Part shown: positions 25,941 to 59,837 of the stretch, in pieces
Numbering within the stretch: the first letter of the stretch is position 1
Layout: every line of letters starts with the position of its first letter
From: Mustelus asterias
Lineage: Eukaryota
Direction of reading: 5' to 3'
DNA length: 60,137 bases
Assembly: GCF_964213995.1 (NCBI RefSeq)
Contig: NW_027590591.1
Coordinates: 186,001 to 246,137, forward strand
Position numbers and translations under genes: made by a program
Notes under the pieces: generated by a model
Seen by the model: the letters and a program-made list of their open reading frames with translations, nothing else
Told to the model about the DNA's origin: nothing
Databases searched by the model: none

Positions 25941-26024
25941 ATAGGCTGGAAAATTGGGTGGAGAGGTGGCAGATGGAATTTAATCCAGATAAATGCGAAG
26001 TGATGCATTTTGGAAGAACTATTG

Positions 26025-35825: not shown

Positions 35826-35934
35826 GGAGATGGGCCACATGCAGGAAAATGGGGTTAGTGTAGATGGACATTTTGGTTGACATGGAGCAGTTTGGGCCGG
35901 AGGGCCTGTTTCCGTGCTGTAACCCTATGATTCT

Positions 35935-41235: not shown

Positions 41236-41315
41236 TCAGTCTTGAGCGGGTGCGGGGCTGGAAGTCCGTTCATTTTCCACGAACAGCTGTTCCGCCTCCC
41301 CTTGCGTCCACACTC
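41236..41315 (-). CDS. Candidate terminal cytoplasmic exon of the MHC gene (coding part)
   Basis: Acceptor ctgactgcattttgcttcccAG at the start of a unique GC-rich island. Direct splicing from the TM exon gives (G)VWTQGEAEQLFVENERTSSPAPAQD* (stop 41236-41238); via the 40-bp exon it gives SVDARGGGTAVRGK* (stop 41270-41272). Confidence 0.55.
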
Positions 41316-41380
41316 CTGGGAAGCAAAATGCAGTCAGGTTATATTGACAGCTAACAATATGGACGGCAGCATTCACATCC

Positions 41381-41655
41381 CGGTGGCACAGTGGTTAGCA
41401 CTGCTGCCTCACAGCGCCAGGGACCCAGGTTCGATTCCCGGCTTGGGTCACTGTCTGTCCTCCCCGTGTCTGCATGGGTTTCCTCTGGTTTCCTCCCACA
41501 GTCCGAAAGACGTGGTTAGGGTGCATTGGCCGTGCTAAATTCTCCCTCAGTGTACCCGAACAGGCACCGGAGTGTGGCGACTAGGGGATTTTCACAGTAA
41601 CTTCATCGCAGTGTTAATGTAAGCCTACTTGTGACAATAAATAAATAAACTTTAA
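41381..41655 (+). mobile_element. HE1-like SINE with alternative tail
   Basis: Same structure as 13972-14253. Confidence 0.75.
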
Positions 41656-41665
41656 ACTGAATAAT

Positions 41666-42200
41666 AGGATGACAGTAAGATTGGGTGGTTAACAGTGAGG
41701 CGGAGTGTCTTAGGCTACAAGAATTTATAGATGGAAAGGTCAAATGGGCGGATAAGCGGCGGATGGAATTTAACCCTGAAAAGTGTGCGGTGATCCACTT
41801 TGGAAGGAGTAATTTTACAAGGAAGAACTCAATGAATGGTAGGACACTGGGAAGTTCTGTGGAGCAAAGGGACCTTGGTGTGTTTGTCCACAGATCTCTG
41901 AAAGTGGAAGGGTGTGTTAGTAGGGTGGTGAAAAAGGCACATGGGACACTCGCCTTTATCAATCGAGGCACAGATTACAAAAGTAGGGAAGTCATGTTGG
42001 AGTTGTATCGAACTTTGGTGAGGTCACAGCTGGAGCACTGTGTGCAGTTCTGGTCACCACATTATCGGAAGGATGTGATTGGACTGGAGGGGGTGCAGAG
42101 GAGATTCACCAGGATGCTGCCTGGGACGGAGCGTTTCAGTTATGAGGAGAGGTTGGAAAGGCTTGGGTTGTTTTCATTGGAGCAGACTGAGGGGCGACCT
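41666..42200 (+). mobile_element. CR1 RT fragment
   Basis: ORF 41685-42278. Confidence 0.88.
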
Positions 42201-42696
42201 AGCCTCAGCCAATTAGAGTCAACCTGCCAACACCCTTGTTTATTCTGTGTTGCCAATGCCACCCCCTCTCCCATCTAGAAGGACAAAGGCAGCAGGTACC
42301 TGGGAACACCCCCACCTGGAGATTCCTCTCTGAGTCACTCACCATCCCAACTGGGAAATATATCGGCCGTTCCTTCACTGTGGCTGGGGTCAATATCCTG
42401 GAACTCCCTCCCGAGCAGAGCTGTGGCTGTACCTACACCTCCCAGACTGCACTGGGTCCAAGATGGCGGCTCACCCACCACCTTGGGAAATCCCCTAGTA
42501 GCCACACTCCGGTGCCTGTTCGGGTACACTGAGGGAGAATTTAGCACGGCCAATGCACCCTAACCATGTCTTTCGGACTTTATTATCTGCTACCAAATTT
42601 ATTATTTGCTACCAAATTTATCAATTTTATCAAATTTATTATTTGCTACCAAATAAACCTGTTGGACTTTAACCTGGTATTGTGAGACTTCTTACT

Positions 42697-43325
42697 TTGA
42701 TAAAGTAAACATGGACCAAATGTTTTCTGTTTCAGAGAATATCATAGAATCCCTACAGTGCAGAAGGAGGCCATTCAGCCCATCGGGTCTGAACCGAACA
42801 CAATCCCACCCAGGCCCTATCCCCATAACCCCTCATATTTATCCTGCAAGTCCCCCTCACACTAAGGAGCAATTTAGCATGGCCAATCAACCTAACCCGC
42901 ATATCTTTGGACTGTGGGAAGATACCGGAGCACCCGGAGGAAACCCACGCAGACACGGGGAGAATGTGCAGACTCCACACAGACAGTGACATTGACAGTG
43001 ACTGTTGTGGGACAATCTAGAACAGGAGGTCACAGGCGTAGGTTGCGAGGCGGTGGATTTAAAACTGAGATGAGGAGGAACTACTTCTCGCAGAGGGTGG
43101 TGAATTTGTGGAACTCGCTGCCCCATCGCGCGGTGGATTCTGAATCATTGAATGGTTTCAGGAAGGAGATGGATATATTTCTAATAAAAAAGGGATTCGG
43201 GGATGTGGGGAACAGGTGGGGAGGTGGGTTTGAGACCAGGGAGAGATCAGCTGTGATCTGATTGAATAGTGGAGCAGGCTCGAAGGGCTGAATTTGCCCA
43301 ATTCTGCTCCTAAATCCTATGTTCC
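42697..43325 (+). mobile_element. CR1 3' end with inserted HE1 SINE (42740-42990, -)
   Basis: RRNYFSQRVVNLWNSLP motif. Confidence 0.82.
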
Positions 43326-44011
43326 ACCTTCTCAAGGGGCAGTTAAGGATGGGCAATAAATGCTGAGTCTAGTCAGCCACGCCCACATCCTGTAAATGAA
43401 GAAAGGAAGAAAGAAATTGTCATGATGGGTTTGAAATTTGGCGCTCTGGCGTTGGGGCTGATTTCCCAACTCTTGTACTCAATGGAAGAGAGTTCCAAAC
43501 TCCCACCACCCTGTCCGAATGCGACCTAACCAAGGTTAGGGAAGGAAATCTGCTGTCTTTACCCAGTCTGACCTACATGTGACTCTAGACCCCACACAGC
43601 AATGCGGTCAACTCCTAACTGCCGCCCCTGGAATGTCTCCAGCGCGACACTTGGGTCAGTGGGAAATTAGGGATGGGGACAAGTGCTGCCCCTCCCCATG
43701 GTTCCCACATCCCATGTGCAGATAAAGGGACAATGCTGTGTGGCTATGTGTGGTTGTTTGAGGCTGATCTGTCACTATGTTACCTGAGTCTGCTGCAGAG
43801 GAATCGGGATTGACGCATCTCTGGTTTGGCACAGCTTCAGAGCCACAGGCAGGGAACCCTGGGAAAGCAAGAACCAACGCACACTCTGAATACACGGCCG
43901 ACATTCCCCACCCCCCAACCTCTCAGAGATCTGTGAAGCCCATTCTCCAGTGAAACGCAGTGTGGAACCTGGTTGTCTTTAACGGGAGAAAGATGGAAGG
44001 AACAGCCAAAC

Positions 44012-44051
44012 CCTTGAGCCAAGTGCTCCTGTTTGCACCGACCGTCCTCGG
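44012..44051 (-). CDS. Candidate short cytoplasmic exon of the MHC gene
   Basis: Acceptor tgttttggcctgtgtatgtgcAG, weak donor GTTTGG, 40 bp, phase 1-2. Encodes (A)EDGRCKQEHLAQ(G). Lies in a unique island. Confidence 0.35.
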
Positions 44052-44146
44052 CTGCACATACACAGGCCAAAACACAAACCCCTCTGCCTCTCACAGAGGC
44101 AACATTAGATAATGGAATGTAGACATGGCTGGCAAGGCCAGCACTT

Positions 44147-44163
44147 ATTGCCCTCTAGTGGCA
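44147..44163 (-). promoter_or_regulatory. CTCF-like motif
   Basis: Minus strand GCCACTAGAGGGCAA matches the CTCF core CCACYAGRKGGC. Confidence 0.4.
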
Positions 44164-44254
44164 CGTGTTTGTATGGTAGCCTCAAACAGACAGAATGCAT
44201 GTTGCATTTTTCACTACACTACAGTTATATCCCTCAGACAGTCAGAAAACACAT

Positions 44255-44668
44255 AACAACATAGGAATTACAAACAGAAATCGGTAATTCAGCCCTTCGA
44301 GCCGGCTCCGCCATTCAATCAGATCATGGCTGATCTCTCCCTGGTCTCAAACCCACCTCCCCACCTCTTCCCCATATCCCCGAATCCCTTTTTTATTAGA
44401 AATATATCCATCTCCTTCTTGAAACCATTCAATGATTCAGACTCCCCCGCGCGATGGGGCAGCGAGTTCCACACATTCACCACCCTCTGCGAGAAGTAGT
44501 TCCTCCTCATCTCAGTTTTAAATCTATCGCTTCTCAACCTATACCTGTGACCTCCTGTTCCAGATTGCCCCACAAGAGGAAACATTTGGTCTCCATTGAC
44601 TTTATCAATCTCTGATAGAATTTTATATCCCTCGATCAGATCCCCCCTCATCCTTCTAAACTCCAGCG
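44255..44668 (-). mobile_element. CR1 3' end, inverted relative of 43005-43325
   Basis: ORF 44319-44756. Confidence 0.85.
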
Positions 44669-44684
44669 ACTCTGAGAATGCGGC

Positions 44685-45140
44685 CAAGGTGGCCTTCACA
44701 ACACACAACAGCGCAGAATCGCTGAGCATAAACTGATAGCCAAGTTCCACACACATGAGGACGGCCTCAGCCGGGATCTTGGGTTCATGTCACACTATCT
44801 GTAACCCCCACGACTTGCCTGGGCTTGCAAAATCTCACTAACTGTCCTGTCTGGAGACAATTCACACCTCTTTAACCTGTGTTTAACCCTCTCTCCACAC
44901 ACATTGTCTGTACCTTTAAGACCTGATTATTGTAAAGACTCGCATTCCAACCATTATTCTGTAAATTGAGTTTGTGTCTATAAGCCCTGTTTGTGAACAG
45001 AATTCCCACTCACCTGATGAAGGAGCAGCACTCCGAAAGCTAGTGGATTTTGCTACCAAATAAACCTGTTGGACTTTAACCTGGTGTTGTGAGACTTCTT
45101 ACTGTGTTTACCCCAGTCCAACGCCGGCATCTCCACATCA
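44685..45140 (+). mobile_element. PLE 3' end with hammerhead motif (45005-45046)
   Basis: Homologous to 34160-34588; CCCACTCACCTGATGAAGGAGCAGCACTCCGAAAGCTAGTGG. Confidence 0.88.
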
Positions 45141-45212
45141 TTACTAGCCCAGTGACATCACCACTGCGCCACCAGGCAAAGGATTCATTATAACATGCAT
45201 TAATACTCTTAC

Positions 45213-45317
45213 CTCTGCACCTGCCGATCCCTCCAGCCAGGGCAATGATGATTCCGGCAACCCCGATTACAATCCCAGCCACGTAGCCATGAGTTGGCCA
45301 ACTTTTCACCTTGGGAG
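45213..45317 (-). CDS. MHC-family gene (probable WB), connecting peptide + transmembrane exon
   Basis: Acceptor cttgttccccAG, donor GTAAGA, 105 bp, phase 1-1. Encodes (A)PKVKSWPTHGYVAGIVIGVAGIIIALAGGIGRCR: a Gly-rich hydrophobic span followed by basic residues. Confidence 0.88.
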
Positions 45318-46073
45318 CTGGGGAACAAGTTAGAATTAGGGTCGGAAGATGTCACAGTTCTGGGTGGGATTGAACCTGCTTTGTTTCCTCCCCTGGGGCC
45401 CCGTGCTACCTCACATCATGGGTCACAGCGAGGTCCAGAGGATGGGCAGCCATGCCTGCTCTCATGCCTGCACCCACACCCCTGGCTTCTTGCTCCTAGA
45501 AAGTGCTGGAAACCAATCAAGTGACATTTCCACTCCAGTTATCCCTGCGCATCACCACAACCCCAACAGAGAGGGGTTACACACGCAGTCCAAGGCCCCA
45601 GCGCTCCCTGGAGTTAAGAAACTATCAATGTCACGACACCACTGACTTCCCAAAGCTGACCCTGAACACCAATCCTTGCCTAAACAAAAACCCACCAATC
45701 ACAGCATCGAAATAGCCCGGAATCTCCCTTTGTAACTCAGAGGCTTGGAACCCAATCAACAGTCTTGTGAGAAAGAAGGACATTTAGTTTAAATGTGAGC
45801 ACCCTGTGAATCAGAGCCTCCACCTGTCCCCACACCCTGAGAACTAACGCATTAACAGTTACCCGCTGGTTCCAAATGAACCACCTGTTTGACCTTAAAT
45901 GTACTAAATAACAGAGGTCAATCATCCTGTTCAGGCTAAAAATGAGTGGTTAGATTTATTTACGTATAAGATTATACAGAGCAATAATCAATGCAAGGGG
46001 CTAATTGTCCTGGCCCAGTAAGGGAGCAGGCAATGTTTCTTTGTGCCTCGAATGATTGTGGGAGAGGGCTTAC

Positions 46074-46355
46074 CCCAAGTCGCTGTTAGTTTGTCGGTGC
46101 TACTGCTGTGCTCCACCTGGCAGGTGTAGATGTCTCTGCTTTGGGGAGTGATGCTGATCTGCAGGGTGGTCTGGAATGTTCCGCCTGTGTTTGGTAAAAT
46201 CCTGCTACTCAACACCTCCTGCTGGACCGTGCCACCATTGTGCAGCCAGGTTGCGTTGATGCCGCTTGGATAGAATCCGTTCACGTGACAGATAAGAAGT
46301 AAAGGGTCTTTCCCTCTGTGCAGGCGATGTGTGGTTATGTTGATGGAGGGCTTGG
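46074..46355 (-). CDS. MHC-family gene (probable WB), Ig C1-set exon (class I alpha3-like)
   Basis: Acceptor ccttccctctctgcAG, donor GTAAG, 282 bp, phase 1-1. Encodes (A)KPSINITTHRLHRGKDPLLLICHVNGFYPSGINATWLHNGGTVQQEVLSSRILPNTGGTFQTTLQISITPQSRDIYTCQVEHSSSTDKLTATW, with CxxxGFYP, W, LPNxxGTFQ and YTCQVEH motifs. Confidence 0.93.
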
Positions 46356-46604
46356 CTGCAGAGAGGGAAGGACGGACAGTTTAACCATCGCCAGATAAAG
46401 TACACACAATATACTGGGAGATCTGTCTCCCGCCGCCCCCCACAGATATTGCTTCCTCCACCATTGTCGCCCTGGATGATTGCCCCCTCTACCTGATGGC
46501 CACCACGGAATGATTGCCATCCCCACCCCCACTCCCGCATCGCTGCCCCGAGTGATCAACCCATCCCTGCAGGAGTTCCCCTTTTTACTCATTCCTGGGA
46601 CACG

Positions 46605-46922
46605 AGCGTCGCTGGCTGGACCAGCATTTAGTGCCCATCCCTAGTTGCCCCTTGGAGGGCAGTTGAGAGTCACCCACATTGCTGTGGCTCTGGAGTCACA
46701 TGTAGGCCAGACCGGGTGAGGACGGCAGATTTCCTTCCCTAAAGGGAACCAGGTGGGTTTTTCCGACAATGGGGCATCAGTAGATTCTTAATTCCAGATA
46801 TTTTTTATTGAATTCAAATTCCACCATCTGCCGTGGCGGGATTCGAACCCGGGTCCCCAGAACATTAGCTGAGTTTCTGGATTAATAGTCTAGTGATAAT
46901 CCCACTAGACCATCACCTCCCC
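46605..46922 (-). mobile_element. SacSINE1-like tRNA SINE
   Basis: Reverse complement of the 2562-2890 family. Confidence 0.75.
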
Positions 46923-48087
46923 TCCCCTCCCCACCCCTCAGGCCTCATCCCCTTGGCACTGCCTGTGTGCCATGGCGGCAGAGACAGGGTGCCCAATTGG
47001 CAATGCCATGGTGCCATGCTGGCACTGCCCCATGGGAACCTCCCTGCCCCATCCCCCGACCACCTCGGGGGCTTCAATGGGCTGCGGTCCCACTGGTGAA
47101 ACATTATAACATCGTGCCCAGCCCCTGTTGGTGAGGCCCACCTGTGATCCTCGCCAGTGAGTACCTTGCCTGGGGGGGTGGGGGGGGGGGGGGGGGGCAG
47201 GCGGGTGGTTATGGTAAGGGAGCCCGGCCGAAAGCGTCCGGCGCTTGTTAATGACATTAAATATTGAAATCAGGAAGGGGGTGAGGCTGATTTTGCCGGA
47301 AAAATGGGGCCGGCAAGATCTTGAGGGGTGTGGAATCGGTGGTGAACTGGATTCTTCGCCACTCAGCCGATCTTACTGGGTGCTCGGCCAGTCAATTGAT
47401 CGATCGCGCCCCCAGTGTTTGTTTTAACCTGAACTAATGCAGAGTTCTGTTGTTTGATGTTTTGCCCTGGGATATTACAGAATGGGGCCTGATTGGGTTG
47501 ATTGACAGGTAAGGTTATAGGACATGGGGGGGCTAGGCTTTCACAGAGAACTCAAGCTGGTCTGCTTATGGATCTTCAGAGAGAGGTCGCTTTCTCTGTA
47601 TCTCTCGCTCCGTCCGACGTGGAGTCTGGAATCTGCCAAGAAATAAGGGTTTTTTTTCTGAGATGCGACCGTTTGTGGGAGTGGGGGAGTTTTCTCTGGA
47701 GGGTTCGGCCTGAGAATGAGAAGACTCTCTGTCTGGATCACTCTCCAGAGGGGTTAAAAGGCTGGAAATCTAGTACCTATGTAAGCATCTTTGGTTTCTG
47801 TGCTATCTGGTTCTAAAGAAGAGGTTTGAGTCTGTGGGGGATACTGCTACATTGGAACAACAGAGAGAGCTAGCTGTTAAGAGTTATACTTTGTCCTGTT
47901 TAAGCATTTTTATTGATGAACGTTATGCTCATTCTTTTTGTTATATTCGAACTGTGTTCTTAAATAAACTTGATTTGATAAAAGCTTCCCAGAGGGTCAC
48001 TGGGATCACACATTATACTCACCCGAATGCTCACTCCATAAAACACAGAGTTTCTGATCTGCTCCTTAACACTCTGTCTAGCACTGT

Positions 48088-49157
48088 NNNNNNNNNNNNN
48101 NNNNNNNNNNNNNNNNNNNNNNNNNNNNNNNNNNNNNNNNNNNNNNNNNNNNNNNNNNNNNNNNNNNNNNNNNNNNNNNNNNNNNNNNNNNNNNNNNNNN
48201 NNNNNNNNNNNNNNNNNNNNNNNNNNNNNNNNNNNNNNNNNNNNNNNNNNNNNNNNNNNNNNNNNNNNNNNNNNNNNNNNNNNNNNNNNNNNNNNNNNNN
48301 NNNNNNNNNNNNNNNNNNNNNNNNNNNNNNNNNNNNNNNNGCTCTCTGTCTCTTTCTATCTGTCCTATTCTGTCCGTCTCACTCTCTCTGTTTGTCTCTC
48401 CATCTTTTTCTTGCTATTTGTCTCTCTCTCTGTTTCAGTCTCTCCCTCTGTGTGTCTCCCTCTTTCTTTCTCTCTCTGTCTCTCTCTCTGTCTCTCTGCC
48501 CCTCTCTATCTCTCTGTCTTGTTGTCNNNNNNNNNNNNNNNNNNNNNNNNNNNNNNNNNNNNNNNNNNNNNNNNNNNNNNNNNNNNNNNNNNNNNNNNNN
48601 NNNNNNNNNNNNNNNNNNNNNNNNNNNNNNNNNNNNNNNNNNNNNNNNNNNNNNNNNNNNNNNNNNNNNNNNNNNNNNNNNNNNNNNNNNNNNNNNNNNN
48701 NNNNNNNNNNNNNNNNNNNNNNNNNNNNNNNNNNNNNNNNNNNNNNNNNNNNNNNNNNNNNNNNNNNNNNNCTGTCTCTCTCACTCTCTCCTGTTCTCTC
48801 TTTCTATCTGTNNNNNNNNNNNNNNNNNNNNNNNNNNNNNNNNNNNNNNNNNNNNNNNNNNNNNNNNNNNNNNNNNNNNNNNNNNNNNNNNNNNNNNNNN
48901 NNNNNNNNNNNNNNNNNNNNNNNNNNNNNNNNNNNNNNNNNNNNNNNNNNNNNNNNNNNNNNNNNNNNNNNNNNNNNNNNNNNNNNNNNNNNNNNNNNNN
49001 NNNNNNNNNNNNNNNNNNNNNNNNNNNNNNNNNNNNNNNNNNNNNNNNNNNNNNNNNNNNNNNNNNNNNNNNNNNNNNNNNNNNNNNNNNNNNNNNNNNN
49101 NNNNNNNNNNNNNNNNNNNNNNNNNNNNNNNNNNNNNNNNNNNNNNNNNNNNNNNNN
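48088..49157. other. N-runs interleaved with CT low-complexity sequence (gap or masking)
   Basis: Runs of n. Confidence 0.95.
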
Positions 49158-49521
49158 CTCCATGAATCTAATCTTATTATTGGCCACATGCCCCTGTCAC
49201 CTGCCTCAGGTGTGGAGATGCCGGCGTTGGACTGGGGTAAACACAGTGAGAGTTTTAACAACACCAGGTTAAAGTCCAACAGGTTTATTTGGTAGCAAAC
49301 GCCACTAGCTTTCTGCCTCAGGGTCAGAGGTTGCTTCCTAGTGTCCCTGTGTGGCCCCCTGGGGATGTTCCTTGCTGTGTTAAGGAGTTATATTGTGGAT
49401 AGATTGCTGTGTTTGTTGTGGAGTGTGGGGGATCTGTGCTCGGACACACAGAGGGGGTCAGTACCCTGCCCGAGGGCCTTGTGTTGTAAATGAGGGTGCG
49501 GGCGGCTTCTCCCTGACAATC

Positions 49522-50600
49522 ACAGTGAGAAGTCTCACACACCAGGTTAAAGTCCAACAGGTTTATTTGGCAGCACTAGCTTTCGGAGCGCTGCTCCTTC
49601 ATCAGGTGAGTGGGAGTTCTGTTCACAAACAGGGCATATAAAGACAAAAACTCAATTTACAAAATAATGGTTGGAATGTGAGTCTTTACAGGTAATCAAG
49701 CCTTAAAGGTACAGACAATGTGAGTGGAGAGAGCGTTAAGCACAGGTTAAAGAGATGTGTATTGTCTCCAGCCAGGACAGTTAGTGGGATTTTGCAAGTC
49801 CAGGCAAGTCGTGGGGGTTACAGATAGTGTGACATGAACCCAAGATCCCGGTTGAGGCCGTCCTCATGTGTGCGGAACCTGGCTATCAGTTTCTGCTCAG
49901 CGACTCTGCGCTGTCGTGTGTCGTGAAGGCCACCTTGGAGAATGCTTACCTGAAGATCAGAGGCCGAATGCCCGTGACCACTGAAGTGTTCCCCAACAGG
50001 AAGAGAACAGTCTTGCCTGGTGATTGTCGAGCGGTGTTCATTCATCCGTTGTCGTAGCGTCTGCATGGTCTCTCCAATGTACCATGCCTCGGGACATCCT
50101 TTCCTGCAGCGTATCAGGTAGACAACGTTGGCCGAGTTGCAAGAGTATGTACCGTGTACCTGGTGGATGGTGTTCTCATGTGAGATGATGGCATCCATGT
50201 CGATGATCCGGCACGTCTTGCAGAGGTTGCCGTGGCAGGGTTGTGTGGTGTCGTGGTCACTGTTCTCCTGAAGGCTGGGTAGTTTGCTGCGGACAATGGT
50301 CTGTTTGAGGTTGTGCGGTTGTTTGAAGGCAAGAAGTGGGGGTGTGGGGATGGCCTTGGCGAGATGTTCGTCTTCATCAATGACATGTTGAAGGCTCCGG
50401 AGGAGATGCCGTAGCTTCTCCGCTTCGGGGAAGTACTGGACGATGAAGGGTACTCTGTCCACCGTGTCCCGTGTTTGTCTTCTGAGGAGGTCGGTGCGGT
50501 TTTTCGCTGTGGCGCGTCGGAACTGTCGATCGATGAGTCGAGCGCCATATCCTGTTCTTATGAGGGCATCTTTCAGCGTCTGGAGGTGTCTGTTGCGATC
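49522..50600 (-). mobile_element. PLE 3' half (GIY-YIG + terminus), inverted relative to its 5' part
   Basis: VVYLIRCRKGC...WYIGET...GLNRD. Confidence 0.92.
49572..49614 (-). ncRNA. Minimal type I hammerhead ribozyme motif (best-conserved copy)
   Basis: CCCACTCAC-CTGATGA-A-GGAGC-AGC-GCTCC-GAAA-GCTA-GTG: intact CUGAUGA/GAAA core and a perfect 5-bp stem II. Confidence 0.72.
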
Positions 50601-51559
50601 TACATCTACATGCACACCAAGAACAGGAAACTTGAGAAACTCGGCATCTCCACCAGCAGCAACCAAGCCTCCCCCGGTACCACAGTAGAAAACAGTACCA
50701 CTGCAGGGAAGCCCATTGTCAACTTGTCGGACTCCACACTTCAACCAGATGAAATCGAAGTTCTCAGCCGAGGGCTCAATTTCTGCCCCACCACCAAAAT
50801 AGACCCCATCAGTCTCGCAGCAGACACAGAGGAATTCATCAGGCGAATGAGGCTGCGGGAGCTCTTCCACAAACCCCAAGAGGCCAACAGCGAACACAAT
50901 GAGACAGCCAATGAACCGGAACAGCCGACAGAGAGATCCACAGTGCAACCGAAGAGGAAAGAGTCGAATTGGACTCCTCCGGAAGGCCGCTGCCCTCGAC
51001 TTGACATGTATGCCCAAGCCATCAGGAGGTGCGTCAACACCAGATTCATCAGCCGCACTCACAAGACAGCCCCGAACATCACCCAAGCACAACGTAACGC
51101 CATCCACGCTCTCAAGACCAACCACAACATTGTCATCAAACCAGCAGACAAAGGAGGGGCCATCGTCATACTGAACAGAACGGATTACTGCAAAGAAGTG
51201 TACCGACAACTGAACAACGAGGAACACTACAGACAGTTACCCACAGATCCGACCAAAGAACACACCCATCAACTCGACACTCTGATCAAAACCTTTGATC
51301 CGGACCTTCAGAGCACCCTCCGTGCTCTCATCCCACGCACTCCCCGCGTTGGAGATCTCTACTGCCTCCCGAAGATACACAAGGCAAACACACCCGGCCG
51401 TCCCATCGTATCGGGCAATGGAACCCTGTGCGAGAACCTCTCCGGCTATGTCGAGGGCATCCTGAAACCCATTGTACAAAGAACCCCCAGCTTTTGTTGC
51501 GACACGACGGACTTCCTACAGAAACTCGGCACACATGGAGCAGTTGAACCAGGAGCACT
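50601..51559 (+). mobile_element. PLE N-terminal/RT portion (resumes at 57057-57883)
   Basis: LSRGLNFCP, KPADKGG, LPKIHK; the frame continues as MDVSALYT at 57067. Confidence 0.92.
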
Positions 51560-52478
51560 CCATAGAACCATAGAAAATTACAGCTCAGAAACAGGCCTTT
51601 TGGCCCTTCTTGTCTGTGCCGAACCATTTTTTGCCTAGTCCCACTGACCTGCACTTGGACCATATCCCTCCACACCCCCCTCATCCATGAACCCGTCCAA
51701 GTTTTTCTTAAATGTTAAAAGTGACCCCGCATTTACCACTTTATCCGGCAGCTCATTCCACACTCCCACCACTCTCTGCGTGAAGAAGCCCCCCCTAATA
51801 TTCCCTTTAAACTTTTCTCCTTTCCCCCTTAACCCATGCCCTCTGGTTTTTTTCTCCCCTAGCCTCAGCGGAAAAAGCCTGCTTGCATTCACTCTATCTA
51901 TACCCATCAAAATCTTATACACCTCTATCAAATCTCCCCTCAATCTTCTACGCTCCAGGGAATAAAGTCCCAACCTATTCAATCTCTCTCTGTAACTCAG
52001 CTTCTCAAGTCCCGGCAACATCCTTGTGAACCTTCTCTGCACTCTTTCAATCTTATATACATCCTTCCTGTAACTAGGTGACCAAAACTGTACACAATAC
52101 TCCAAACTCGGCCTCACCAATGCCTTATATAACCTTACCATAACACTCCAACTTTTATACTCGATACTCCGATTTATAAAGGCCAATGTACCAAAGGCAC
52201 TCTTTACGACCCTATCCACCTGTGACGTCACTTTTAGGGAATTCTGTACCTGTCTTCCCAGATCCCTCTGTTCAACTGCACTCTTCAGAGTCCTACCATT
52301 TACCCTGTACATTCTTCTTGAGTTTGTCCTTCCAAAGTGCAATATCTCACACTTGTCTGCGTTAAATTCCATTTGCCATTTTTCAGCCCATTTTTCTAGT
52401 TGGTCCAAATCCCTCTGCAAGCTTTGAAAACCTTCCTCACTGTCCACTACACCTCCAATCTTTGTATCATCAGCAAAC
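51560..52478 (-). mobile_element. CR1 3' part (its 5' part is at 56830-57056)
   Basis: WISKF / ADDTKIGG junction split by nested inserts. Confidence 0.9.
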
Positions 52479-52592
52479 AGGGGAGACACTAGCACAGTGG
52501 TATTGTCACTCGATCAGTAACACAGAGACCCAGGGCAATGTTCTGGGGACATCAGTTCAAATCCCACCACGGCAGATGGTGAAATTAGAATT

Positions 52593-55500
52593 CATAGAAC
52601 ATTACAGCGCAGAACAGGCCCTTCGGCCCACGATGTTGCACCGACCAGTTAAAAAAAAAACTGTGACCCTCCAACCTAAACCAATTTCTTTTCGTCCATG
52701 AACCTATCTACGGATCTCTTAAACGCCCCCAAACTAGGCGCATTTACTACTGATGCTGGCAGGGCATTCCAATCCCTCACCACCCTCTGGGTAAAGAACC
52801 TACCCCTGACATCGGTTCTATAACTACCCCCCCTCAATTTAAAGCCATGCCCCCTCGTGCTGGATTTCTCCATCAGAGGAAAAAGGCTATCACTATCCAC
52901 CCTATCTAAACCTCTAATCATCTTATATGTTTCAATAAGATCCCCTCTTAGCCGCCGCCTTTCCAGCGAAAACAATCCCAAATCCCTCAGCCTCTCCTCA
53001 TAGGATCTCCCCTCCATACCAGGCAACATCCTGGTAAACCTCCTCTGCACCCTCTCCAAAGCCTCCACATCCTTCCTGTAATGTGGGGACCAGAACTGCA
53101 CACAGTACTCCAAGTGCGGCCGCACCAGAGTTGTGTACAGTTGCAACATAACGCTACGACTCCTAAATTCAATCCCCCTACCAATAAACGCCAAGACACC
53201 ATATGCCTTCTTAACAACCTTATCTACTTGATTCCCAACTTTCAGGGATCTATGCACACATACACCTAGATCCCTCTGCTCCTCCACACTATTCAAAGTC
53301 CTCCCGTTAGCCCTATACTCAACACATCTGTTATTCCTACCAAAGTGAATTACCTCACACTTCTCCGCATTAAACTCCATCCGCCACCTCTCGGCCCAAC
53401 TTTGCAACCTGTCTAAGTCTTCCTGCAAACTACGACACCCTTCCTCACTGTCTACCACACCACCGACTTTGGTGTCATCAGCAAATTTGCTAATCCACCC
53501 AACTATACCCTCATCCAGATCATTAATAAATATTACAAACAGCAGTGGCCCCAAAACAGATCCCTGAGGTACACCACTTGTAACCGCACTCCATGATGAA
53601 TATTTACTATCAACCACCACCCTCTGTTTCCTATCCGCTAGCCAATTCCTGATCCAATTTCCTAGATCACCCCCAATCCCATACATCTGCATTTTCTGCA
53701 GAAGCCTACCATGGTGAACCTTATCAAACGCCTTACTAAAATCCATATATACCACGTCCACTGCCTTGCCCCCATCCACCTCCTTGGTCACTTTCTCAAA
53801 AAACTCAATAAGGTTAGTAAGGCACGACCTACCTGCCACAAAACCATGCTGACTATCACCTATCAATTCATTACTCTCCAAATAACTATAAATCCTATCC
53901 CTTATAATTTTTTCCAACATCTTGCCGACAACAGAAGTGAGACTCACCGGTCTATAATTCCCGGGGAAGTCTCTGTTCCCCTTCTTAAACAATGGGACAA
54001 CATTCGCTAACCTCCAATCTTCTGGTACTATACCAGAGGCCAACGACGACCTGAAGATCAGAGCCAGAGGCTCTGCAATCACTTCTCTTGCCTCCCAGAG
54101 AATCCTTGGACAAATCCCATCCGGACCAGGGGATTTATCTATTTTCAGACCCTCCAGAATATCCTGCACATCCTCCTTATCAACTGTAATACTGTCTATT
54201 CTACTCCCTTGCAACCCAGTGTCCTCCTCAGCTATATTCATGTCCCCTTGCGTGAACACCGAAGAGAAATATTGGTTCAATGCTTCACCAATCTCCTCCG
54301 GTTCCACACATAACTTCCCTCTGCCATCTATAACTGGCCCTAAACTTGCCCTAACCAACCTTCTGTTCTTGACATACCTATAGAACGCCTTAGGATTCTC
54401 TTTAACCCTATCCGCCAAAGTCTTCTCATGTCCCCTTTTAGCCCTTCTAAGCTCGCTCTTCAACTCCCTCTTAGCCAATCTAAAGCTTTCTAGTGCACTA
54501 CCCGAGTGCTCACGTCTCATCCGAACATAAGCCTCCTTTTTCTTTTTAACCAACAAAGAAACTTTTTTGGTGCACCACGGTTCCCTAGCCCTACCAATTC
54601 CTCCTTGCCTGACAGGGACATACCTATCACAGACTCGCAGTAGCTGCTCCTTGAAAAAACTCCACATGTCGGACGTTCCCAGTCCCTGTAATCTCCTAGT
54701 CCAACCTATGTTTCCTAATTCTCTCCTAATAGCCTCATAATTACCCTTCCCCCAGCTAAAACCACTGGCCCGAGGTTCATGCCTATCCCTTTCCATCACT
54801 AAGGTGAACGTAACCGAATTGTGGTCACTATCACCAAAATGCACACCAACTTCCAAGTCTAGCACCTGGTCTGGCTCATTTCCCAGCACCAGATCCAATA
54901 TAGCCTCACCTCTAGTTGGCCTGTCTACATACTGAGTCAAAAAACCTTCCTGCACGCTTTGAACAAAAACTGACCCCTCTAACGAGCTAGAGCTATAACA
55001 ATTCCAGTCAATATTAGTCAAGTTAAAATCCCCCATAACAATTGCCCTATTACTTTCACTCCTAAGCAGGATTGACTCCGCAATCCTTTCCTCAACCTCT
55101 CTAGAACTTTTAGGAGGTCTATAAAAGACTCCCAACAGGGTGACCTCTCCTCTCCTATTTCTAATCTCCGCCCATACTACCTCAACAGATAAGTCCTCAT
55201 CAAACCTCCTCTCTGACACTGTGATACAATCTCTGACCAATAATGCTACCCCTCCCCCTCTTCTACCTCCTTCCCTACTTCGACTAAAACATTTGAACCC
55301 CGGGACCTGCAGCATCCATTCCTGCCCCTGCTCTATCCATGTCTCTGAAATAGCCACAACATCGAAGTCCCAGGTACTGATCCACGCTGCAAGTTCACCC
55401 ACTTTATTGCGAATACTCCTGGCATTGAAGTATACACATTTCAAACCCTGCTCCACCCCACCTCTGCAATGCCGTGCATTGCAGTCCCCATCCATGCATC

Positions 55501-55885
55501 CCTCACTTTCAGCCCCACTACTCAGGATCCCTCCCCCCCCCCGAATCAGTTTAAACCTCCCTGCATGGCCTTAGCAAATTTACCCCCCAGGATATTGGTC
55601 CCCTTCTGATTAAGGTGTAGACCATCCTTCTCATAGAGGTCACACCTTCCCCAGTACGAGCCCCAATTGCTTAAGTACCTGAACCCCTCCCTCCTGCACC
55701 ATCCCCTCAGCCATGAATTCAAACCTTCCCTCTCCCTATTCCTCTCTAAACTATCCCGTGGTACAGGCAAGAGTCCAGAGATAACCACTCTGTCAGTCTT
55801 GGCCTTTAGTTTCCACCCCAACTCCATAAATCCCTGCCTAATATCCCCTTCCCCTATCCTCCCTATGTCGTGTGTCCCCACATGT
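52593..55885 (-). mobile_element. CR1 with intact ORF2 (52676-55495, 939 aa APE+RT) and ORF1 C-terminus
   Basis: Uninterrupted frame with [21 protein letters not shown] and FADD; ORF1 esterase DGLHLN. Confidence 0.96.
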
Positions 55886-56002
55886 ACAATTCAATAAAAC
55901 TCTGGAATTAGAAGTTTAATGATGACCATGAATCCATCGTCAATTGTCGTAAGAACCCGTCTGGTTCACTCATGTTCTTTCGGAAAGGAAATTTGTTCAG
56001 GG

Positions 56003-56828
56003 AGGCACGGTGACACAGTGGTTAGCACTGCTGCTTCACAGCTCCAGGGTCCCGGGGCGGCACGGTGACACAGTGGGTTAGCACTGCTGCTTCACAGCTC
56101 CAGGGACCCGGGGCGGCACGGTGACACAGTGGTTAGCACTGCTGCTTCACAGCTCCAGGGTCCCGGGGCGGCACGGTAGCACAGTGGTTAGCACTGCTGC
56201 TTCACAGCTCCAGGGTCCCGGGGCGGCACGGTAGCACAGTGGTTAGCACTGCTCCCTCACAGCTCCAGGGACCCGGGGCAGCACGGTGACACAGTGGTTA
56301 GCACTGCTCCCTCACAGCTCCAGGGACCCGGGGCAGCACGGTAGCACAGTGGTTAGCACTGCTCCCTCACAGCTCCAGGGACCCGGGGCAGCACGGTAGC
56401 ACAGTGGTTAGCACTGCTGCTTCACAGCTCCAGGGTCCCGGGCGGCACGGTGACACAGTGGTTAGCACTGCTGCTTCACAGCTCCAGGGTTCCGGGCGGC
56501 ACGGTGACACAGTGGTTAGCACTGCTGCTTCACAGCTCCAGGGTCCTGGGTTCGATTCCCGGATCGGGTCACTGTCTGTGTGGAGTTTGCAAGTTCTCCT
56601 CGTGTCTGCGTGGGTTTCCTCCGGGTGCTCTGGTTTCCTCCCACAGTGCAAAGATGTGCGGGTTAGGTTGATTGGCCAGGTTAAAAATTGCCCCTTAGAG
56701 TCCTGAGATGCGTAGGTTAGAGGGATTAGCGGGTAAAATATGTGGGGGTAGGGCCTGGGTGGGATTGTGGTCGGTGCAGACTCGATGGGCCGAATGGCCT
56801 CCTTCTGCACTGTAGGGTTTCTATGATT
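56003..56828 (+). mobile_element. HE1 SINE with ~10 tandem copies of its 55-bp tRNA-head 5' segment
   Basis: Unit GGGGCGGCACGGTGACACAGTGGTTAGCACTGCTGCTTCACAGCTCCAGGGTCCC, followed by a complete HE1 body. Confidence 0.9.
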
Positions 56829-57056
56829 TCTAAACTTGCTGATCCAATTTACCACATTATCATCCAGATCATTGATATAGATGACAAACAACAATGGACC
56901 CAGCACCGATCCCTGCGGCACACCACTAGTCACAGGCCTCCACTCAGAGAAGCAATCCTCCACAACCACTCTCTGGCTTCTTCCATTGAGCCAGTGTCTA
57001 ATCCAATTTACTACCTCCCCATGTATACCCAGCGACTGAACCTTCCTAACTAACCT

Positions 57057-57883
57057 CCTCGTCACAATGGATGTCTCGGCACTCTACACCAGCATCCCCC
57101 ATGACGATGGCATTGCTGCAACGGCCTCAGTGCTCAGCGCCAACAACTGCCAGTTTCCAGATGCAATTTTACATCTCATCCGCTTCATCCTGGACCACAA
57201 TGTCTTCACCTTCAACAACCAGTTCTTCATCCAGACACACGGAACAGCCATGGGGACCAAATTTGCACCTCAATATGCCAACATCTTCATGCACAGGTTC
57301 GAACAAGACTTCTTCACCGCACAGGACCTTCAACCGATGCTATACACTAGAACATTTTCTTCCTTTGGACTCATGGTGAGCAATCACTGAAACAACTATA
57401 TGATGACATCAACAAGTTCCATCCCACCATCAGGCTCACCATGGACTACTCTCCGGAATCGGTTGCATTCTTGGACACACGCATCTCCATTAAGGACGGT
57501 CACCTCAGCACCTCACTGTACCGCAAGCCCACGGATAACCTCACGATGCTCCACTTCTCCAGCTTCCACCCTAAACACGTTAAAGAAGCCATCCCCTACG
57601 GACAAGCCCTCCGGATACACAGGATCTGCTCGGATGAGGAGGATCGCAACAGACACCTCCAGACGCTGAAAGATGCCCTCATAAGAACAGGATATGGCGC
57701 TCGACTCATTGATCAACAGTTCCGACGCGCCACAGCGAAAAACCGCACCGACCTCCTCAGAAGACAAACACGAGACACGGCGGACAGAGTACGGGCATTC
57801 AGCCTCTGATCTTTGGGGAAGCGTTCTCCAAGGCGGCCTTCACGACACACGACAGCGCAGAGTCGCTGAGCAGAGACTGATAG
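57057..57883 (+). mobile_element. PLE RT continuation, internally deleted
   Basis: HGTAMGTKFAPQYANIFM and YRKPT motifs. Confidence 0.9.
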
Positions 57884-57884
57884 C

Positions 57885-58324
57885 TGTGTGTATGAGTGTG
57901 TCANNNNNNNNNNNNNNNNNNNNNNNNNNNNNNNNNNNNNNNNNNNNNNNNNNNNNNNNNNNNNNNNNNNNNNNNNNNNNNNNNNNNNNNNNNNNNNNNN
58001 NNNNNNNNNNNNNNNNNNNNNNNNNNNNNNNNNNNNNNNNNNNNNNNNNNNNNNNNNNNNNNNNNNNNNNNNNNNNNNNNNNNNNNNNNNNNNNNNNNNN
58101 NNNNNNNNNNNNNNNNNNNNNNNNNNNNNNNNNNNNNNNNNNNNNNNNNNNNNNNNNNNNNNNNNNNNNNNNNNNNNNNNNNNNNNNNNNNNNNNNNNNN
58201 NNNNNNNNNNNNNNNNNNNNNNNNNNNNNNNNNNNNNNNNNNNNNNNNNNNNNNNNNNNNNNNNNNNNNNNNNNNNNNNNNGTGTGTGTGCGAGTGTGTG
58301 AGTGTGTCTGTGCGAGTGTGTGAA

Positions 58325-58360
<36 letters not shown>

Positions 58361-59075
58361 GAGTGTGCAAGGTGTGTGTGCGAGTGTGTGAATGTGTGAG
58401 TGTGTGTGTGTGTGCGAGTGTGCGAGTGTGCAAGGTGCGAGTGTGTGAGTGTGTGAGTGTGCGAGCGACTGTGTGCGAGTGTGTGAGTGTGTGTGCGAGT
58501 GTGTGAATGTGTGAGTGTGTGAATGTGTGAGTGTGTGTGTGTGTGTGTGCGAGTGTGTGNNNNNNNNNNNNNNNNNNNNNNNNNNNNNNNNNNNNNNNNN
58601 NNNNNNNNNNNNNNNNNNNNNNNNNNNNNNNNNNNNNNNNNNNNNNNNNNNNNNNNNNNNNNNNNNNNNNNNNNNNNNNNNNNNNNNNNNNNNNNNNNNN
58701 NNNNNNNNNNNNNNNNNNNNNNGAATGTGTGAGCGACTGTGTGCGAGTGTGTNNNNNNNNNNNNNNNNNNNNNNNNNNNNNNNNNNNNNNNNNNNNNNNN
58801 NNNNNNNNNNNNNNNNNNNNNNNNNNNNNNNNNNNNNNNNNNNNNNNNNNNNNNNNNNNNNNNNNNNNNNNNNNNNNNNNNNNNNNNNNNNNNNNNNNNN
58901 NNNNNNNNNNNNNNNNNNNNNNNNNNNNNNNNNNNNNNNNNNNNNNNNNNNNNNNNNNNNNNNNNNNNNNNNNNNNNNNNNNNNNNNNNNNNNNNNNNNN
59001 NNNNNNNNNTGAGTGTGCGAGTATCTGAGTGTGTGAGCGAGTGTGTGCGTGTGTGAGTGTGTGTGAGCGAGTGTG
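57885..59075. repeat. (GT)n-rich microsatellite region with N-runs
   Basis: GT/GA repeats and runs of n. Confidence 0.9.
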
Positions 59076-59076
59076 T

Positions 59077-59414
59077 CATAGAAACCTTAGTGCAGAAAGA
59101 GGCCATTCAGCCCATCGAGTCTGCACCGACCACAATCCCACCCAGGCCCTACTCCCATATCCCTACATATTTTACCCACTAATCCCTCTAATCTACGCAT
59201 CCCAGGATACTAAGGGGCAATTTTAGCATGGCCAATCAACCCAACCCGCACATCTTTGGACTGTGGGAGGAAACCGGAGCACCCGGAGGAAACCCACGCA
59301 GACACGAGGAGAATGTGCAAACTCCACACAGACAGTGACCCGAGCCGGGAATCGAACCCAGGTCCCTGGAGCTGTGAAGCAGCAGTGCTAACCACTGTGC
59401 TACCGTGCCGCCCC
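59077..59414 (-). mobile_element. HE1 SINE, full length
   Basis: Complete head, core and tail. Confidence 0.9.
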
Positions 59415-59435
59415 ATTCACACTGAGGTCACTTAC

Positions 59436-59693
59436 CAATCAGCCTGCGAGCTGCCTGTATAATTGCCTCTGCTACGAGCGGTGCGAATGCGCCGTAACGG
59501 ATGTACTGTTTGATCAGCCTCTCATTCGCATTGAGACTCTGGACCAATGGTTCTGCTACTGGCTTCACGGCCAGGAACTGATTGGTGGAATAGTCGAATC
59601 GGATAAACTCTGTCCCGTCGTAAGCGGCACTCAGCTTTGTGGCTGGGGTTTGGGAATTATCGAAGGTGAGCATGAACTGGGTGATGTGTGTCC
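59436..59693 (-). CDS. MHC-family gene (probable W-category beta chain), membrane-distal beta1/alpha2-like exon
   Basis: Acceptor cttttccctccatccAG, donor GTAAGT, 258 bp, phase 1-1. Encodes (G)THITQFMLTFDNSQTPATKLSAAYDGTEFIRFDYSTNQFLAVKPVAEPLVQSLNANERLIKQYIRYGAFAPLVAEAIIQAARRLI, which aligns by eye to class I alpha2 (GSHTLQxM...AYDGKD) and class II beta1 (EYVRFDSDVGEYRAV). Confidence 0.85.
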
Positions 59694-59837
59694 CTGGATG
59701 GAGGGAAAAGCGAGGCAGTTAGTCTGAGTAACAAACCCCCATTCCGAATCCAACCACCACAGCTGGCCTTTCCCTCTGCAATCCCCCCCTCCCCCACAAA
59801 TTCCTTCCCTTCATTGACTATGTTGGGGGTAGGATTA

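What the first reader, a model, noticed from the sequence alone, without database searches (positions are those of the whole stretch)
41236..59693. MHC gene with mixed class I/class II features: probable W-category beta chain (WB)
Seen in sequence: three phase-1 exons with clean splice sites join into a peptide-binding-type domain (86 aa), an Ig C1 domain (94 aa) and a Gly-rich TM. Established: W-category MHC, described in cartilaginous fish, bony fish and some tetrapods, has class II-type two-domain chains with class I interface motifs, and WB has an alpha3-like Ig domain. The Ig exon also resembles my recollection of the houndshark class I alpha3-like 'DS-1' sequence (unverified). Inference: this is a WB gene, and a leader exon plus a WA partner with a beta2m-like Ig domain should lie beyond position 60137.
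Basis: partly seen in the sequence, partly recalled or inferred. Interest (0 to 1): 0.92.

Follow-up and report, generated by a model that had tools for sequence, protein, structure and literature searches.

The report
Shark W-category MHC beta-chain gene

Summary
The gene lies on the minus strand. Five coding exons are in the window: beta1 59693-59436, Ig/beta2 46355-46074, CP/TM 45317-45213, and two cytoplasmic exons 43858-43784 and 41315-41236. All have AG/GT sites and all are phase 1.

All six N gaps lie in the 13-kb beta1-beta2 intron. An RNA-like contig joins 59436 directly to 46355, so the gaps do not affect the reading frame.

The same run joins a signal-peptide exon, absent from the window, directly to the beta1 exon. 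The chain therefore has two ectodomains, not a class I three-domain layout.

The five exon translations match RefSeq XP_078061380.1 (Mustelus asterias, "DR-1 beta chain-like, partial") at 261 of 261 residues. That protein's 90% cluster holds the banded houndshark full-length beta chains and the 1992 "class I alpha3 homolog" exon, which Okamura et al. 2021 identify as WB.

The diagnostic residues fit W/class I and not class II. The WA partner was not testable.

First-stage notes on other pieces of this genome also report W-type pairs; these are unchecked.

Verdict: already known, low interest.

The parts
59436..59693 (-). Beta1 (membrane-distal, Ialpha2/IIBbeta1-type) exon. 258 nt, phase 1 in and out. 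It has no cysteine and carries the motif A-Y-D-G-T-E.
   Evidence: Searches give the translation and the AG/GT sites. Searches give the matches to class I alpha2 and class II beta1. One search shows X6 contigs covering exactly 59436-59694 at depth 42, with zero depth in both flanking introns. One search shows 85/85 identity to P0014 and 74/85 to houndshark WB.
46356..59435 (-). Intron between the beta1 and beta2 exons, about 13 kb. It holds all six N gaps, LINE and SINE copies and simple repeats. No further MHC-type exon is present in its readable parts.
   Evidence: One search shows reverse-transcriptase ORFs. Searches show the gap flanks are CT- or GT-rich repeats. One search shows profile searches of all six frames find only the two known exons. 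Searches show the intron is spliced out in RNA.
46074..46355 (-). Beta2 exon: C1-set Ig domain, 282 nt, phase 1. It has P57 and G61 (the 'LPNTGGTFQ' stretch) and no W61.
   Evidence: Searches give the translation and splice sites. One search gives C1-set at E 4.3e-19. One search shows class I alpha3 and class II beta2 as best PDB matches. One search gives the diagnostic residues. One search shows 88/93 identity to houndshark WB / Q7M2H2.
45213..45317 (-). Connecting-peptide and transmembrane exon, 105 nt, phase 1. Glycine-rich helix with GxxxG (GYVAGIVIGVAGIIIALAGG).
   Evidence: Searches give the sequence. One search shows 33/34 identity to houndshark WB. One search is a paper passage stating that the W-category beta-chain TMD has a GxxxG motif.
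43784..43858 (-). Cytoplasmic exon 1, 75 nt, phase 1. It is present in the 282-aa houndshark form and absent from the 257-aa form, so it is probably skipped alternatively.
   Evidence: map it. One search shows the houndshark 282-aa and 257-aa proteins differ by exactly this segment. One search shows 23/24 identity.
41236..41315 (-). Cytoplasmic exon 2, ending with stop codon TGA at 41238-41236.
   Evidence: map it. One search shows 25/25 identity to P0014 and 22/25 to houndshark WB.

Best explanation
The window carries five of the six coding exons of a W-category MHC beta-chain gene (WB); only the leader exon is missing. The source is the starry smooth-hound Mustelus asterias or a near-identical genome, and the gene is the ortholog of the published banded houndshark WB.

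Shown here: the gene is intact, transcribed and spliced as leader - beta1 - beta2 (Ig) - CP/TM - cytoplasmic tail. That is a class II-type chain with two ectodomains.

Shown here: it carries the class I-type interface residues. These are Q6, A32 and G35 with E at position 37 in beta1, and P57 and G61 in place of the class II tryptophan in beta2.

Inferred from Okamura et al. 2021: the chain pairs with a WA alpha chain whose Ig domain resembles beta2-microglobulin. The WA gene would lie head-to-head upstream, beyond the window. The pair would form a class II-shaped, doubly membrane-anchored heterodimer held together by class I-type interdomain contacts.

Inferred: it acts as a non-classical, low-polymorphism MHC molecule whose ligand is unknown. 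The usual groove disulfide is absent from beta1 in every elasmobranch relative examined.
For: 1. **Exon anatomy.** Five exons, all with AG/GT sites and all phase 1.

2. **RNA.** Run X6 matches at 99% or better. Its contigs cover only the exon (59436-59694) and give zero depth in both introns. One 647-nt contig continues from 59436 into the letters of 46326-46355.
   - Another X6 contig continues upstream of 59693 with letters that I translated by hand as LLLLGIFQTA, followed by G-THITQ.
   - This compares with the houndshark leader MLRSSVLLLLGLFQTAG-THITQ.
   - Run X10, a related organism at 95-99% likeness, shows the same junction.

3. **Identity.** 261/261 residues match XP_078061380.1. That protein is 92% identical to houndshark BBJ00831/BBJ00833. 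The 90% cluster holds Q7M2H2 and BBJ00831-4, and Q7M2H2 is contained in the full-length chains. The paper equates that full-length chain with WB.

4. **Unbiased search with the beta1 exon alone.** Against 1.84 billion representative proteins there were 5 hits at E<=0.001. Four of the 5 are elasmobranch chains of 259-291 aa in which the match starts at residues 3-89. Three of them have leader-beta1-Ig-TM layouts; the fourth, P0002, lacks the Ig domain.

5. **Diagnostic residues.** Among 19 elasmobranch family members including this one:
   - A32 19/19, G35 19/19, P57 19/19.
   - G61 17/19 (R in the other 2), W61 0/19.
   - Class II beta controls have W61 3/3 and P57 0/3.
   - Class I controls have P57 4/4 and G61 4/4.

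6. **Tree.** 26 rows and 179 columns. The window protein joins houndshark WB at 100/99. The 19 elasmobranch chains sit on one side of a branch at 96/95, apart from 4 class I and 3 class II beta rows.

[quoted passage not shown] 2023, section 10 read).
Against: - The WA partner and the leader exon are not in the window, so pairing and head-to-head layout are untested for this copy.
- Position 37 is E, not the D named in the paper. Houndshark WB also has E.
- The link 'BBJ00831-4 = WB of the paper' is inferred from the overlap with Q7M2H2 and the paper's wording. The accession table (SI Table S3) and the numbered alignments (Datasets S1-S3) are in supplements that were closed. No paper in the library names these accessions.
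- My tree has no shark classical class I or class II beta rows and no bony-fish or amphibian WB rows, because the searches returned none.
- A second X6 unitig (58 nt, depth 16.2, against 7.1 for the leader junction) joins different letters to the same acceptor. The leader form may therefore not be the only 5' form, or even the main one, in that sample.
- NCBI's automatic name for the protein is 'class II DR-1 beta chain-like'.
Confidence: 0.93

Rival explanations
1. [quoted passage not shown] The 86-codon exon would be its alpha2 domain, and the alpha1 exon would lie upstream beyond the window.
For: The distal exon aligns to class I alpha2: MR1 residues 110-149 and Pfam MHC_I positions 111-151. 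It begins with a class I alpha2-like 'THITQ.M' and carries AYDG. The Ig exon has the class I residues P57 and G61.
Against: RNA-like contigs from two runs join a hydrophobic leader directly to this exon. The 92%-identical houndshark proteins of 282 aa, and 17 of 19 family members, start the domain at residues 18-52, right after a signal peptide. Class I controls align from residue 131 or later. The TM region is class II-like and glycine-rich.
Confidence: 0.02
2. It is a conventional (classical or non-classical) MHC class II beta-chain gene, as NCBI's automatic name says.
For: It has the two-domain beta-chain architecture and a glycine-rich TM. Pfam MHC_II_beta scores 20.9 bits, exactly at the cutoff. 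HLA-DR beta chains are among the best PDB matches to the Ig exon. NCBI names the whole family class II beta chain-like.
Against: The tryptophan at position 61 of beta2, which Okamura et al. call invariant in conventional class II, is G here. It is W in 0 of 19 family members and in 3 of 3 class II beta controls. P57, A32 and G35 are of the class I/W type. The beta1 disulfide is absent. The family is separated from the class II beta controls in the tree at 96/95, and class II beta forms its own group at 100/100. In the profile search, class II beta proteins score 115 bits or less, against 246 bits or more for family members.
Confidence: 0.02
3. It is a decayed or silent gene copy. The RefSeq model is 'partial' because the 5' end has been lost.
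For: The RefSeq protein lacks a leader. No leader exon is in the window. The introns are full of retroelements and assembly gaps.
Against: All five exons are open and have canonical splice sites. Contigs of run X6 cover the exon at depth 42 with no differing letters, and they carry a leader joined in frame.
Confidence: 0.03

Closest known systems
Banded houndshark (Triakis scyllium) W-category beta chain WB. Deposited as 'MHC class II beta chain like protein 1/2' (BBJ00831-BBJ00834); its Ig exon is UniRef Q7M2H2 'MHC class I alpha 3 domain homolog' (Okamura et al. 2021 PNAS, PMC8713811; Hashimoto et al. 1992).
   Same: - 92% identity overall.
- Per exon: 74/85, 88/93, 33/34, 23/24 and 22/25.
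- Same exon-defined layout, and the same long and short cytoplasmic forms are possible.
- Same diagnostic residues, including E at position 37 and no beta1 cysteines.
- Sister in the tree at 100/99.
   Different: - It comes from a different genus of the same family (family placement is from my own knowledge).
- The 11 differences in beta1, against 5 in the Ig domain, show that the distal domain evolves faster.
- G instead of D at the residue before G61.
- C instead of R after the TM.
NCBI RefSeq XP_078061380.1, 'DLA class II histocompatibility antigen, DR-1 beta chain-like, partial' [Mustelus asterias].
   Same: Identical to the five exon translations at 261/261 residues. This is the same gene as predicted by NCBI's pipeline.
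   Different: The RefSeq model is 5'-partial and carries a class II name. The RNA contigs laid here show that a leader exon exists, and the diagnostic residues place the gene in the W-category.
MHC class I heavy chain, alpha2 and alpha3 domains (for example MR1 and classical class I).
   Same: It belongs to the beta1/alpha2 domain lineage. It has the residues that contact beta2-microglobulin W60/61 in class I (Q6, A32, G35, acidic 37) and the alpha3-type P57 and G61.
   Different: It has no alpha1 domain on the same chain: the leader is spliced directly to this exon. It lacks the alpha2 disulfide. It has a class II-like glycine-rich TM.
Conventional MHC class II beta chain (DRB-like).
   Same: Two ectodomains, one exon per domain in phase 1, a GxxxG-bearing TM and a short cytoplasmic tail.
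   Different: It lacks the invariant W61 of beta2 and the beta1 disulfide. It carries class I-type interface residues. It forms a separate clade.

Membership tests
W-category MHC, beta chain (WB) | Class II-type chain: signal peptide, one membrane-distal domain, one C1-set Ig domain, then CP/TM/CY, with each domain on its own exon. | tested here: met
   The exons are mapped. The leader-to-beta1 and beta1-to-beta2 junctions are seen in RNA-like contigs. The houndshark ortholog has the same layout. The leader exon itself is outside the window.
W-category MHC, beta chain (WB) | Beta1 shares the class I alpha2 residues Q6, A32 and G35 at the interface with the beta2m-like domain. | tested here: met
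   Q, A and G are present at the corresponding places. The numbering was mapped by spacing and by class I and class II control rows, because Dataset S1 was closed.
W-category MHC, beta chain (WB) | D37 in beta1, the hydrogen-bond partner of W61 of beta2m/WA. | tested here: inconclusive
   The residue is E here and in houndshark WB. Among the 19 family members it is E in 10, D in 5 and other in 4. The acidic character is kept in 15 of 19.
W-category MHC, beta chain (WB) | Beta2 has P57 and mostly G61, and never the class II W61. | tested here: met
   P and G are present here. The family shows P57 19/19, G61 17/19 and W61 0/19. Class II beta controls show W61 3/3.
W-category MHC, beta chain (WB) | Beta-chain-type TM with conserved glycines (GxxxG). 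| tested here: met
   The TM reads GYVAGIVIGVAGIIIALAGG. The family has invariant glycines in the TM. Dataset S3 was not visible.
W-category MHC, beta chain (WB) | Close sequence kinship to a named WB. | tested here: met
   It is in the same 90% cluster as the houndshark chains that contain the 1992 Ig exon. Identity is 92% and the two are sister in the tree at 100/99. The equation with 'WB' rests on the paper's text, not on an accession list.
W-category MHC, beta chain (WB) | Paired, head-to-head WA gene, and heterodimer formation with WA. | not testable with these tools
   The window ends 444 bases upstream of the beta1 exon.
W-category MHC, beta chain (WB) | Low allelic polymorphism (non-classical). 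| not tested
   No population data were examined. X6 contigs show no differing letters over the beta1 exon, but that is a single sample.
Conventional MHC class II beta chain | Invariant W61 in beta2 and the conserved beta1 disulfide. | tested here: not met
   The residue at position 61 is G and beta1 has no cysteine.
MHC class I heavy chain | Three ectodomains (alpha1-alpha2-alpha3) on one chain. | tested here: not met
   The leader is joined directly to the alpha2-type exon in RNA-like contigs of two runs. Family members start this domain at residues 18-52.

The most novel reading that the evidence does not exclude
This WB gene may have a second, more abundant 5' form. A different upstream exon, which reads in frame as ...QKPEAVIKE-G-THITQ and is not a signal peptide over the 9 codons seen, is spliced to the same acceptor at 59693. 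That would give either a leaderless or N-terminally extended WB, or a transcript shared with an upstream gene. A white shark prediction (XP_041035582.1) likewise puts a foreign 87-residue N-terminus with its own hydrophobic segment in front of a WB beta1 domain.
Probability: 0.15. Interest if true: 0.35.

Novelty: already known. Interest (0 to 1): 0.2.

Why it matters
W-category MHC is of real interest for the old question of how class I and class II diverged. However, the family was described in 2021 from a shark of the same family, and W-type genes have been surveyed in elasmobranch genomes since 2023.

This locus adds three small things:
- A correctly labelled ortholog in another species. 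RefSeq calls it a DR-1 beta chain-like partial protein.
- RNA evidence that supplies its missing leader junction.
- The observation that 0 of 19 elasmobranch relatives keep the beta1 groove disulfide, while all 19 keep A32, G35 and P57.

Supplements I could not open may already report the third point.

Tried and rejected
**Tried without result**
- The search for homologous proteins with the Ig exon alone returned no candidate. This is expected from its length filter and is not evidence of absence.
- A search for the leader exon in the window found nothing. I used tblastn with the houndshark protein, an ungapped BLOSUM62 scan of all six frames with the first 17 residues of stored protein P0022 at threshold 30, and short motifs.
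- A search for a second MHC-type exon (WA, alpha1 or alpha2) found only the two known exons. I used tblastn and profile HMMs of the Ig and distal domains run against all six-frame fragments of 30 aa or more.
- Runs X1 and X2 laid nothing at 85% likeness.
- A paper search for BBJ00831, BBJ00833, Q7M2H2 and XP_078061380 found 0 papers.
- A search for 'Mustelus asterias' plus MHC found 1 preprint, on TLR genes. I saw only the listing and did not read it.
- The 1992 paper (PMC48626) is not held, so the name 'DS-1' stays unverified.
- Large ORFs elsewhere in the window: 10 of the 55 ORFs of 130 aa or more were scanned. They are LINE reverse transcriptase, endonuclease or ORF1, or gave no hit.

**Rejected readings**
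- Class I heavy chain, conventional class II beta and pseudogene; see the rival explanations.

**Rows dropped**
- For the residue table and tree, 4 of 30 sequences (P0036, P0039, P0040, P0047) were dropped because their best match covered fewer than 140 of the 179 profile positions.

**Labels that are my own**
- P0003 was labelled 'teleost class I' by me from its sequence. No call gave its source.

- The look-up of encoding contigs and structure prediction. No neighbouring genes of the orthologs and no structure model were obtained.

Full report
**What is in the sequence**

The gene lies on the minus strand. Five coding exons were mapped by translation, by tblastn with related proteins and by a splice-site printout.

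| Exon | Coordinates | Length |
|---|---|---|
| beta1 | 59693-59436 | 258 nt |
| beta2 / C1-set Ig | 46355-46074 | 282 nt |
| Connecting peptide + TM | 45317-45213 | 105 nt |
| Cytoplasmic 1 (CY1) | 43858-43784 | 75 nt |
| Cytoplasmic 2 (CY2) | 41315-41236 | 80 nt, ends in TGA |

- Every exon is preceded by a pyrimidine tract and AG. Every exon except the last is followed by GT.
- All exons are entered in phase 1, and the first four have lengths divisible by three.
Each was searched on its own.

**The assembly gaps**

- All six N runs (48088-49157 and 57904-59009) lie within the 13-kb intron between the beta1 and beta2 exons.
- The nearest gap ends 427 bases from an exon. The gaps sit in CT-rich or GT-rich simple sequence.
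- The readable parts of that intron hold LINE reverse-transcriptase ORFs and SINEs.
- Profile HMMs of the Ig and distal domains, run on all six-frame fragments of the whole window, hit only the two known exons. tblastn gave the same result.
- The houndshark proteins run from the last beta1 residue to the first Ig residue with nothing between. No exon is therefore expected inside the gaps.

**RNA evidence (runs found)**

I laid four runs on 59416-59835. Run X6 belongs to organism C, the same organism as the runs that hold the whole stretch.

- X6 gave three contigs, all 99% or more alike. They cover 59436-59694/5 only, and both flanking introns have zero depth.
- One 647-nt X6 contig (depth 42.3) continues past 59436 with 30 letters that occur exactly once in the window, at 46326-46355. 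That stretch is the start of the Ig exon on the minus strand. The beta1-to-beta2 splice is therefore seen directly, across all six gaps.
- A 111-nt X6 contig (depth 7.1) continues upstream of 59693. I reverse-complemented and translated its letters by hand. They read LLLLGIFQTA, then a Gly codon split over the junction, then THITQ.
- The houndshark protein begins MLRSSVLLLLGLFQTAG-THITQ.
- Run X10, from another organism at 95-99% likeness, shows the same junction with ...GIFQTV.
- Runs X1 and X2 laid nothing.
- A third X6 unitig (58 nt, depth 16.2) joins 27 other letters to the same acceptor, in frame as QKPEAVIKE-G. These letters are not in the window (motif scan). This second 5' form remains unexplained.
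- All the runs are Logan contigs. Depths are therefore rough, and strand and transcript ends cannot be read from them.

**What it is related to**

- Pfam places the Ig exon in C1-set (E 4.3e-19). The distal exon is placed weakly in MHC_II_beta (20.9 bits, equal to the cutoff) and in the alpha2 part of MHC_I.
- PDB sequence matches of the distal exon are to class I alpha2 (MR1 residues 110-149) and class II beta1. The Ig exon matches class I alpha3 and DR beta2 about equally.
- phmmer with the beta1 exon alone, against 1.84 billion representatives, gave 5 hits at E<=0.001.
  - Four are elasmobranch chains of 259-291 aa from Cetorhinus, Carcharodon, Stegostoma and Mobula. NCBI names three of them class II beta chain-like and the fourth, P0002, 'uncharacterized protein'. 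The match begins near the N-terminus in P0001, P0004 and P0005, and at residue 89 in P0002.
  - The fifth is a 915-aa prediction with repeated class I-like units.
- A word-based search with the Cetorhinus protein returned P0014. This is XP_078061380.1, 'DLA class II histocompatibility antigen, DR-1 beta chain-like, partial' [Mustelus asterias]. It is identical to all five exon translations at 261 of 261 residues. The window is therefore M. asterias or a near-identical genome.

**The link to W-category**

The 90% identity cluster of P0014 has 7 members:
- P0014 itself.
- Four Triakis scyllium proteins, BBJ00831-4, named 'MHC class II beta chain like protein 1/2' (282 and 257 aa).
- One unnamed MetaClust entry.

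Q7M2H2 is contained exactly in the 282-aa chains.

Okamura et al. [quoted passage not shown] That earlier exon is from Hashimoto et al. 1992. They name this chain WB.

P0014 is 92% identical to these chains. The accession table and the numbered alignments are in supplements that were closed, so this equation is an inference from text plus sequence. It is not a lookup.

**Diagnostic residues**

The paper gives these as W/class I-type: Q6, A32, G35 and D37 in beta1, and P57 and G61 in beta2. It describes W61 as invariant in conventional class II beta.

In a profile alignment of 26 chains, this gene has Q, A, G, E, P and G at those positions.

| Group | Rows | A32 | G35 | P57 | G61 | W61 |
|---|---|---|---|---|---|---|
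| Elasmobranch family | 19 | 19 | 19 | 19 | 17 (R in 2) | 0 |
| Class II beta controls | 3 | 0 | 1 | 0 | 0 | 3 |
| Class I controls | 4 | 3 | 4 | 4 | 4 | 0 |

- Position 37 in the elasmobranch family is E in 10 members, D in 5 and other in 4.
- No family member has the two groove cysteines. 13 of 19 have no cysteine in beta1 at all. Two have a single Cys at the first disulfide position.
- The TM has consecutive GxxxG motifs. A 2026 paper notes a GxxxG in the W-category beta TMD (passages seen).

**Tree**

- Input was 26 rows and 179 columns, with model LG+G4.
- The window protein is sister to houndshark WB at 100/99. The two catshark chains join next, then the lamniform chains.
- The 19 elasmobranch chains sit on one side of a branch at 96/95.
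- Class II beta controls group at 100/100 and class I controls at 94/93.
- Limits: there are no shark classical class I or II rows and no bony-fish WB rows, because the searches returned none. Four short rows were dropped. Two class I rows have long branches.
- In the profile search, 27 proteins passed E<=0.001 among 7344 candidates. 19 elasmobranch chains scored 246 bits or more, and 8 others (class I, class II beta and one unnamed Ig-domain protein) scored 170 bits or less.

**How it most likely works**

Shown here:
- An intact, spliced, expressed two-ectodomain beta chain with class I-type interface residues and a class II-type TM.

Inferred from Okamura et al.:
- It pairs with a WA chain encoded head-to-head upstream. 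The WA Ig domain resembles beta2-microglobulin and places W61 against Q6/A32/G35/acidic-37 of this chain.
- The dimer reaches the cell surface, as shown for tiger salamander WA/WB.
- Like other W members, it lacks the full classical peptide-anchoring residue sets and high polymorphism. A non-classical role with an unknown ligand is therefore the best guess.

The missing groove disulfide across the family is consistent with a non-classical groove, but that is my own inference.

**Context and novelty**

- Verissimo et al. [quoted passage not shown]
- First-stage notes of this scan list W-type pairs on other pieces of this genome. They are unchecked.
- The rest of the window is mostly LINE copies and minisatellites.
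- The gene type, its houndshark ortholog and a RefSeq model of this very gene already exist. The finding is correct but already known.
- The useful residue is a corrected label for a mislabelled partial RefSeq model and an unexplained second 5' junction.

- No ortholog neighbourhoods and no structure model were obtained.

Noticed in passing
window 59693-59695 (acceptor of the beta1 exon); letters from run X6, not in the window: A 58-nt unitig of run X6 (depth 16.2) joins 27 letters other than the leader to the same acceptor. Read by hand, they are in frame as QKPEAVIKE-G-THITQ. The leader-bearing unitig has depth 7.1. This may be an alternative first exon, or a paralog that shares the first 31 bases of the exon.
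   Followed up: partly
window 56000-56550: A 55-base unit (GGGCGGCACGGTGACACAGTGGTTAGCACTGC...) repeats 10 times at 94% match. Similar sequence occurs singly elsewhere in the window, for example at 41380-41440, where I read it as the head of a SINE; that reading is my own and was not tested. Here the unit is amplified into a tandem array inside the WB intron.
   Followed up: no
window 10620-13419 and 35123-35826: A 33-base minisatellite occurs twice: 84.7 copies at 93% match, and again with 21.3 copies of the same unit in a shifted register. It gives long open frames of the type ...ALTLPQCGAPS... on both strands. The first array overlaps the stretch that another first-stage note calls a SIT1/TRAT1-like adaptor gene.
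   Followed up: no
window 22222-30305, 24074-26008 (-), 52676-55495 (-), 4882-5778, 17440-18285 (-): Several LINE copies carry endonuclease and reverse-transcriptase ORFs, and one ORF has a GDSL-esterase-like match. A 939-aa RT-bearing ORF sits inside the WB intron. These are ordinary retroelements.
   Followed up: partly
protein P0002 (XP_041035582.1, Carcharodon carcharias), not in the window: A white shark prediction puts an 87-residue foreign N-terminus, with its own hydrophobic segment, in front of a WB beta1 domain. It then joins beta1 directly to the TM region with no Ig domain. This is either a mis-prediction or a truncated WB paralog.
   Followed up: no
protein P0014 = XP_078061380.1 (RefSeq model of this gene): RefSeq labels this gene 'DLA class II histocompatibility antigen, DR-1 beta chain-like, partial'. 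By its residues and kinship it is a W-category beta chain, and RNA contigs show that the missing leader exists.
   Followed up: yes
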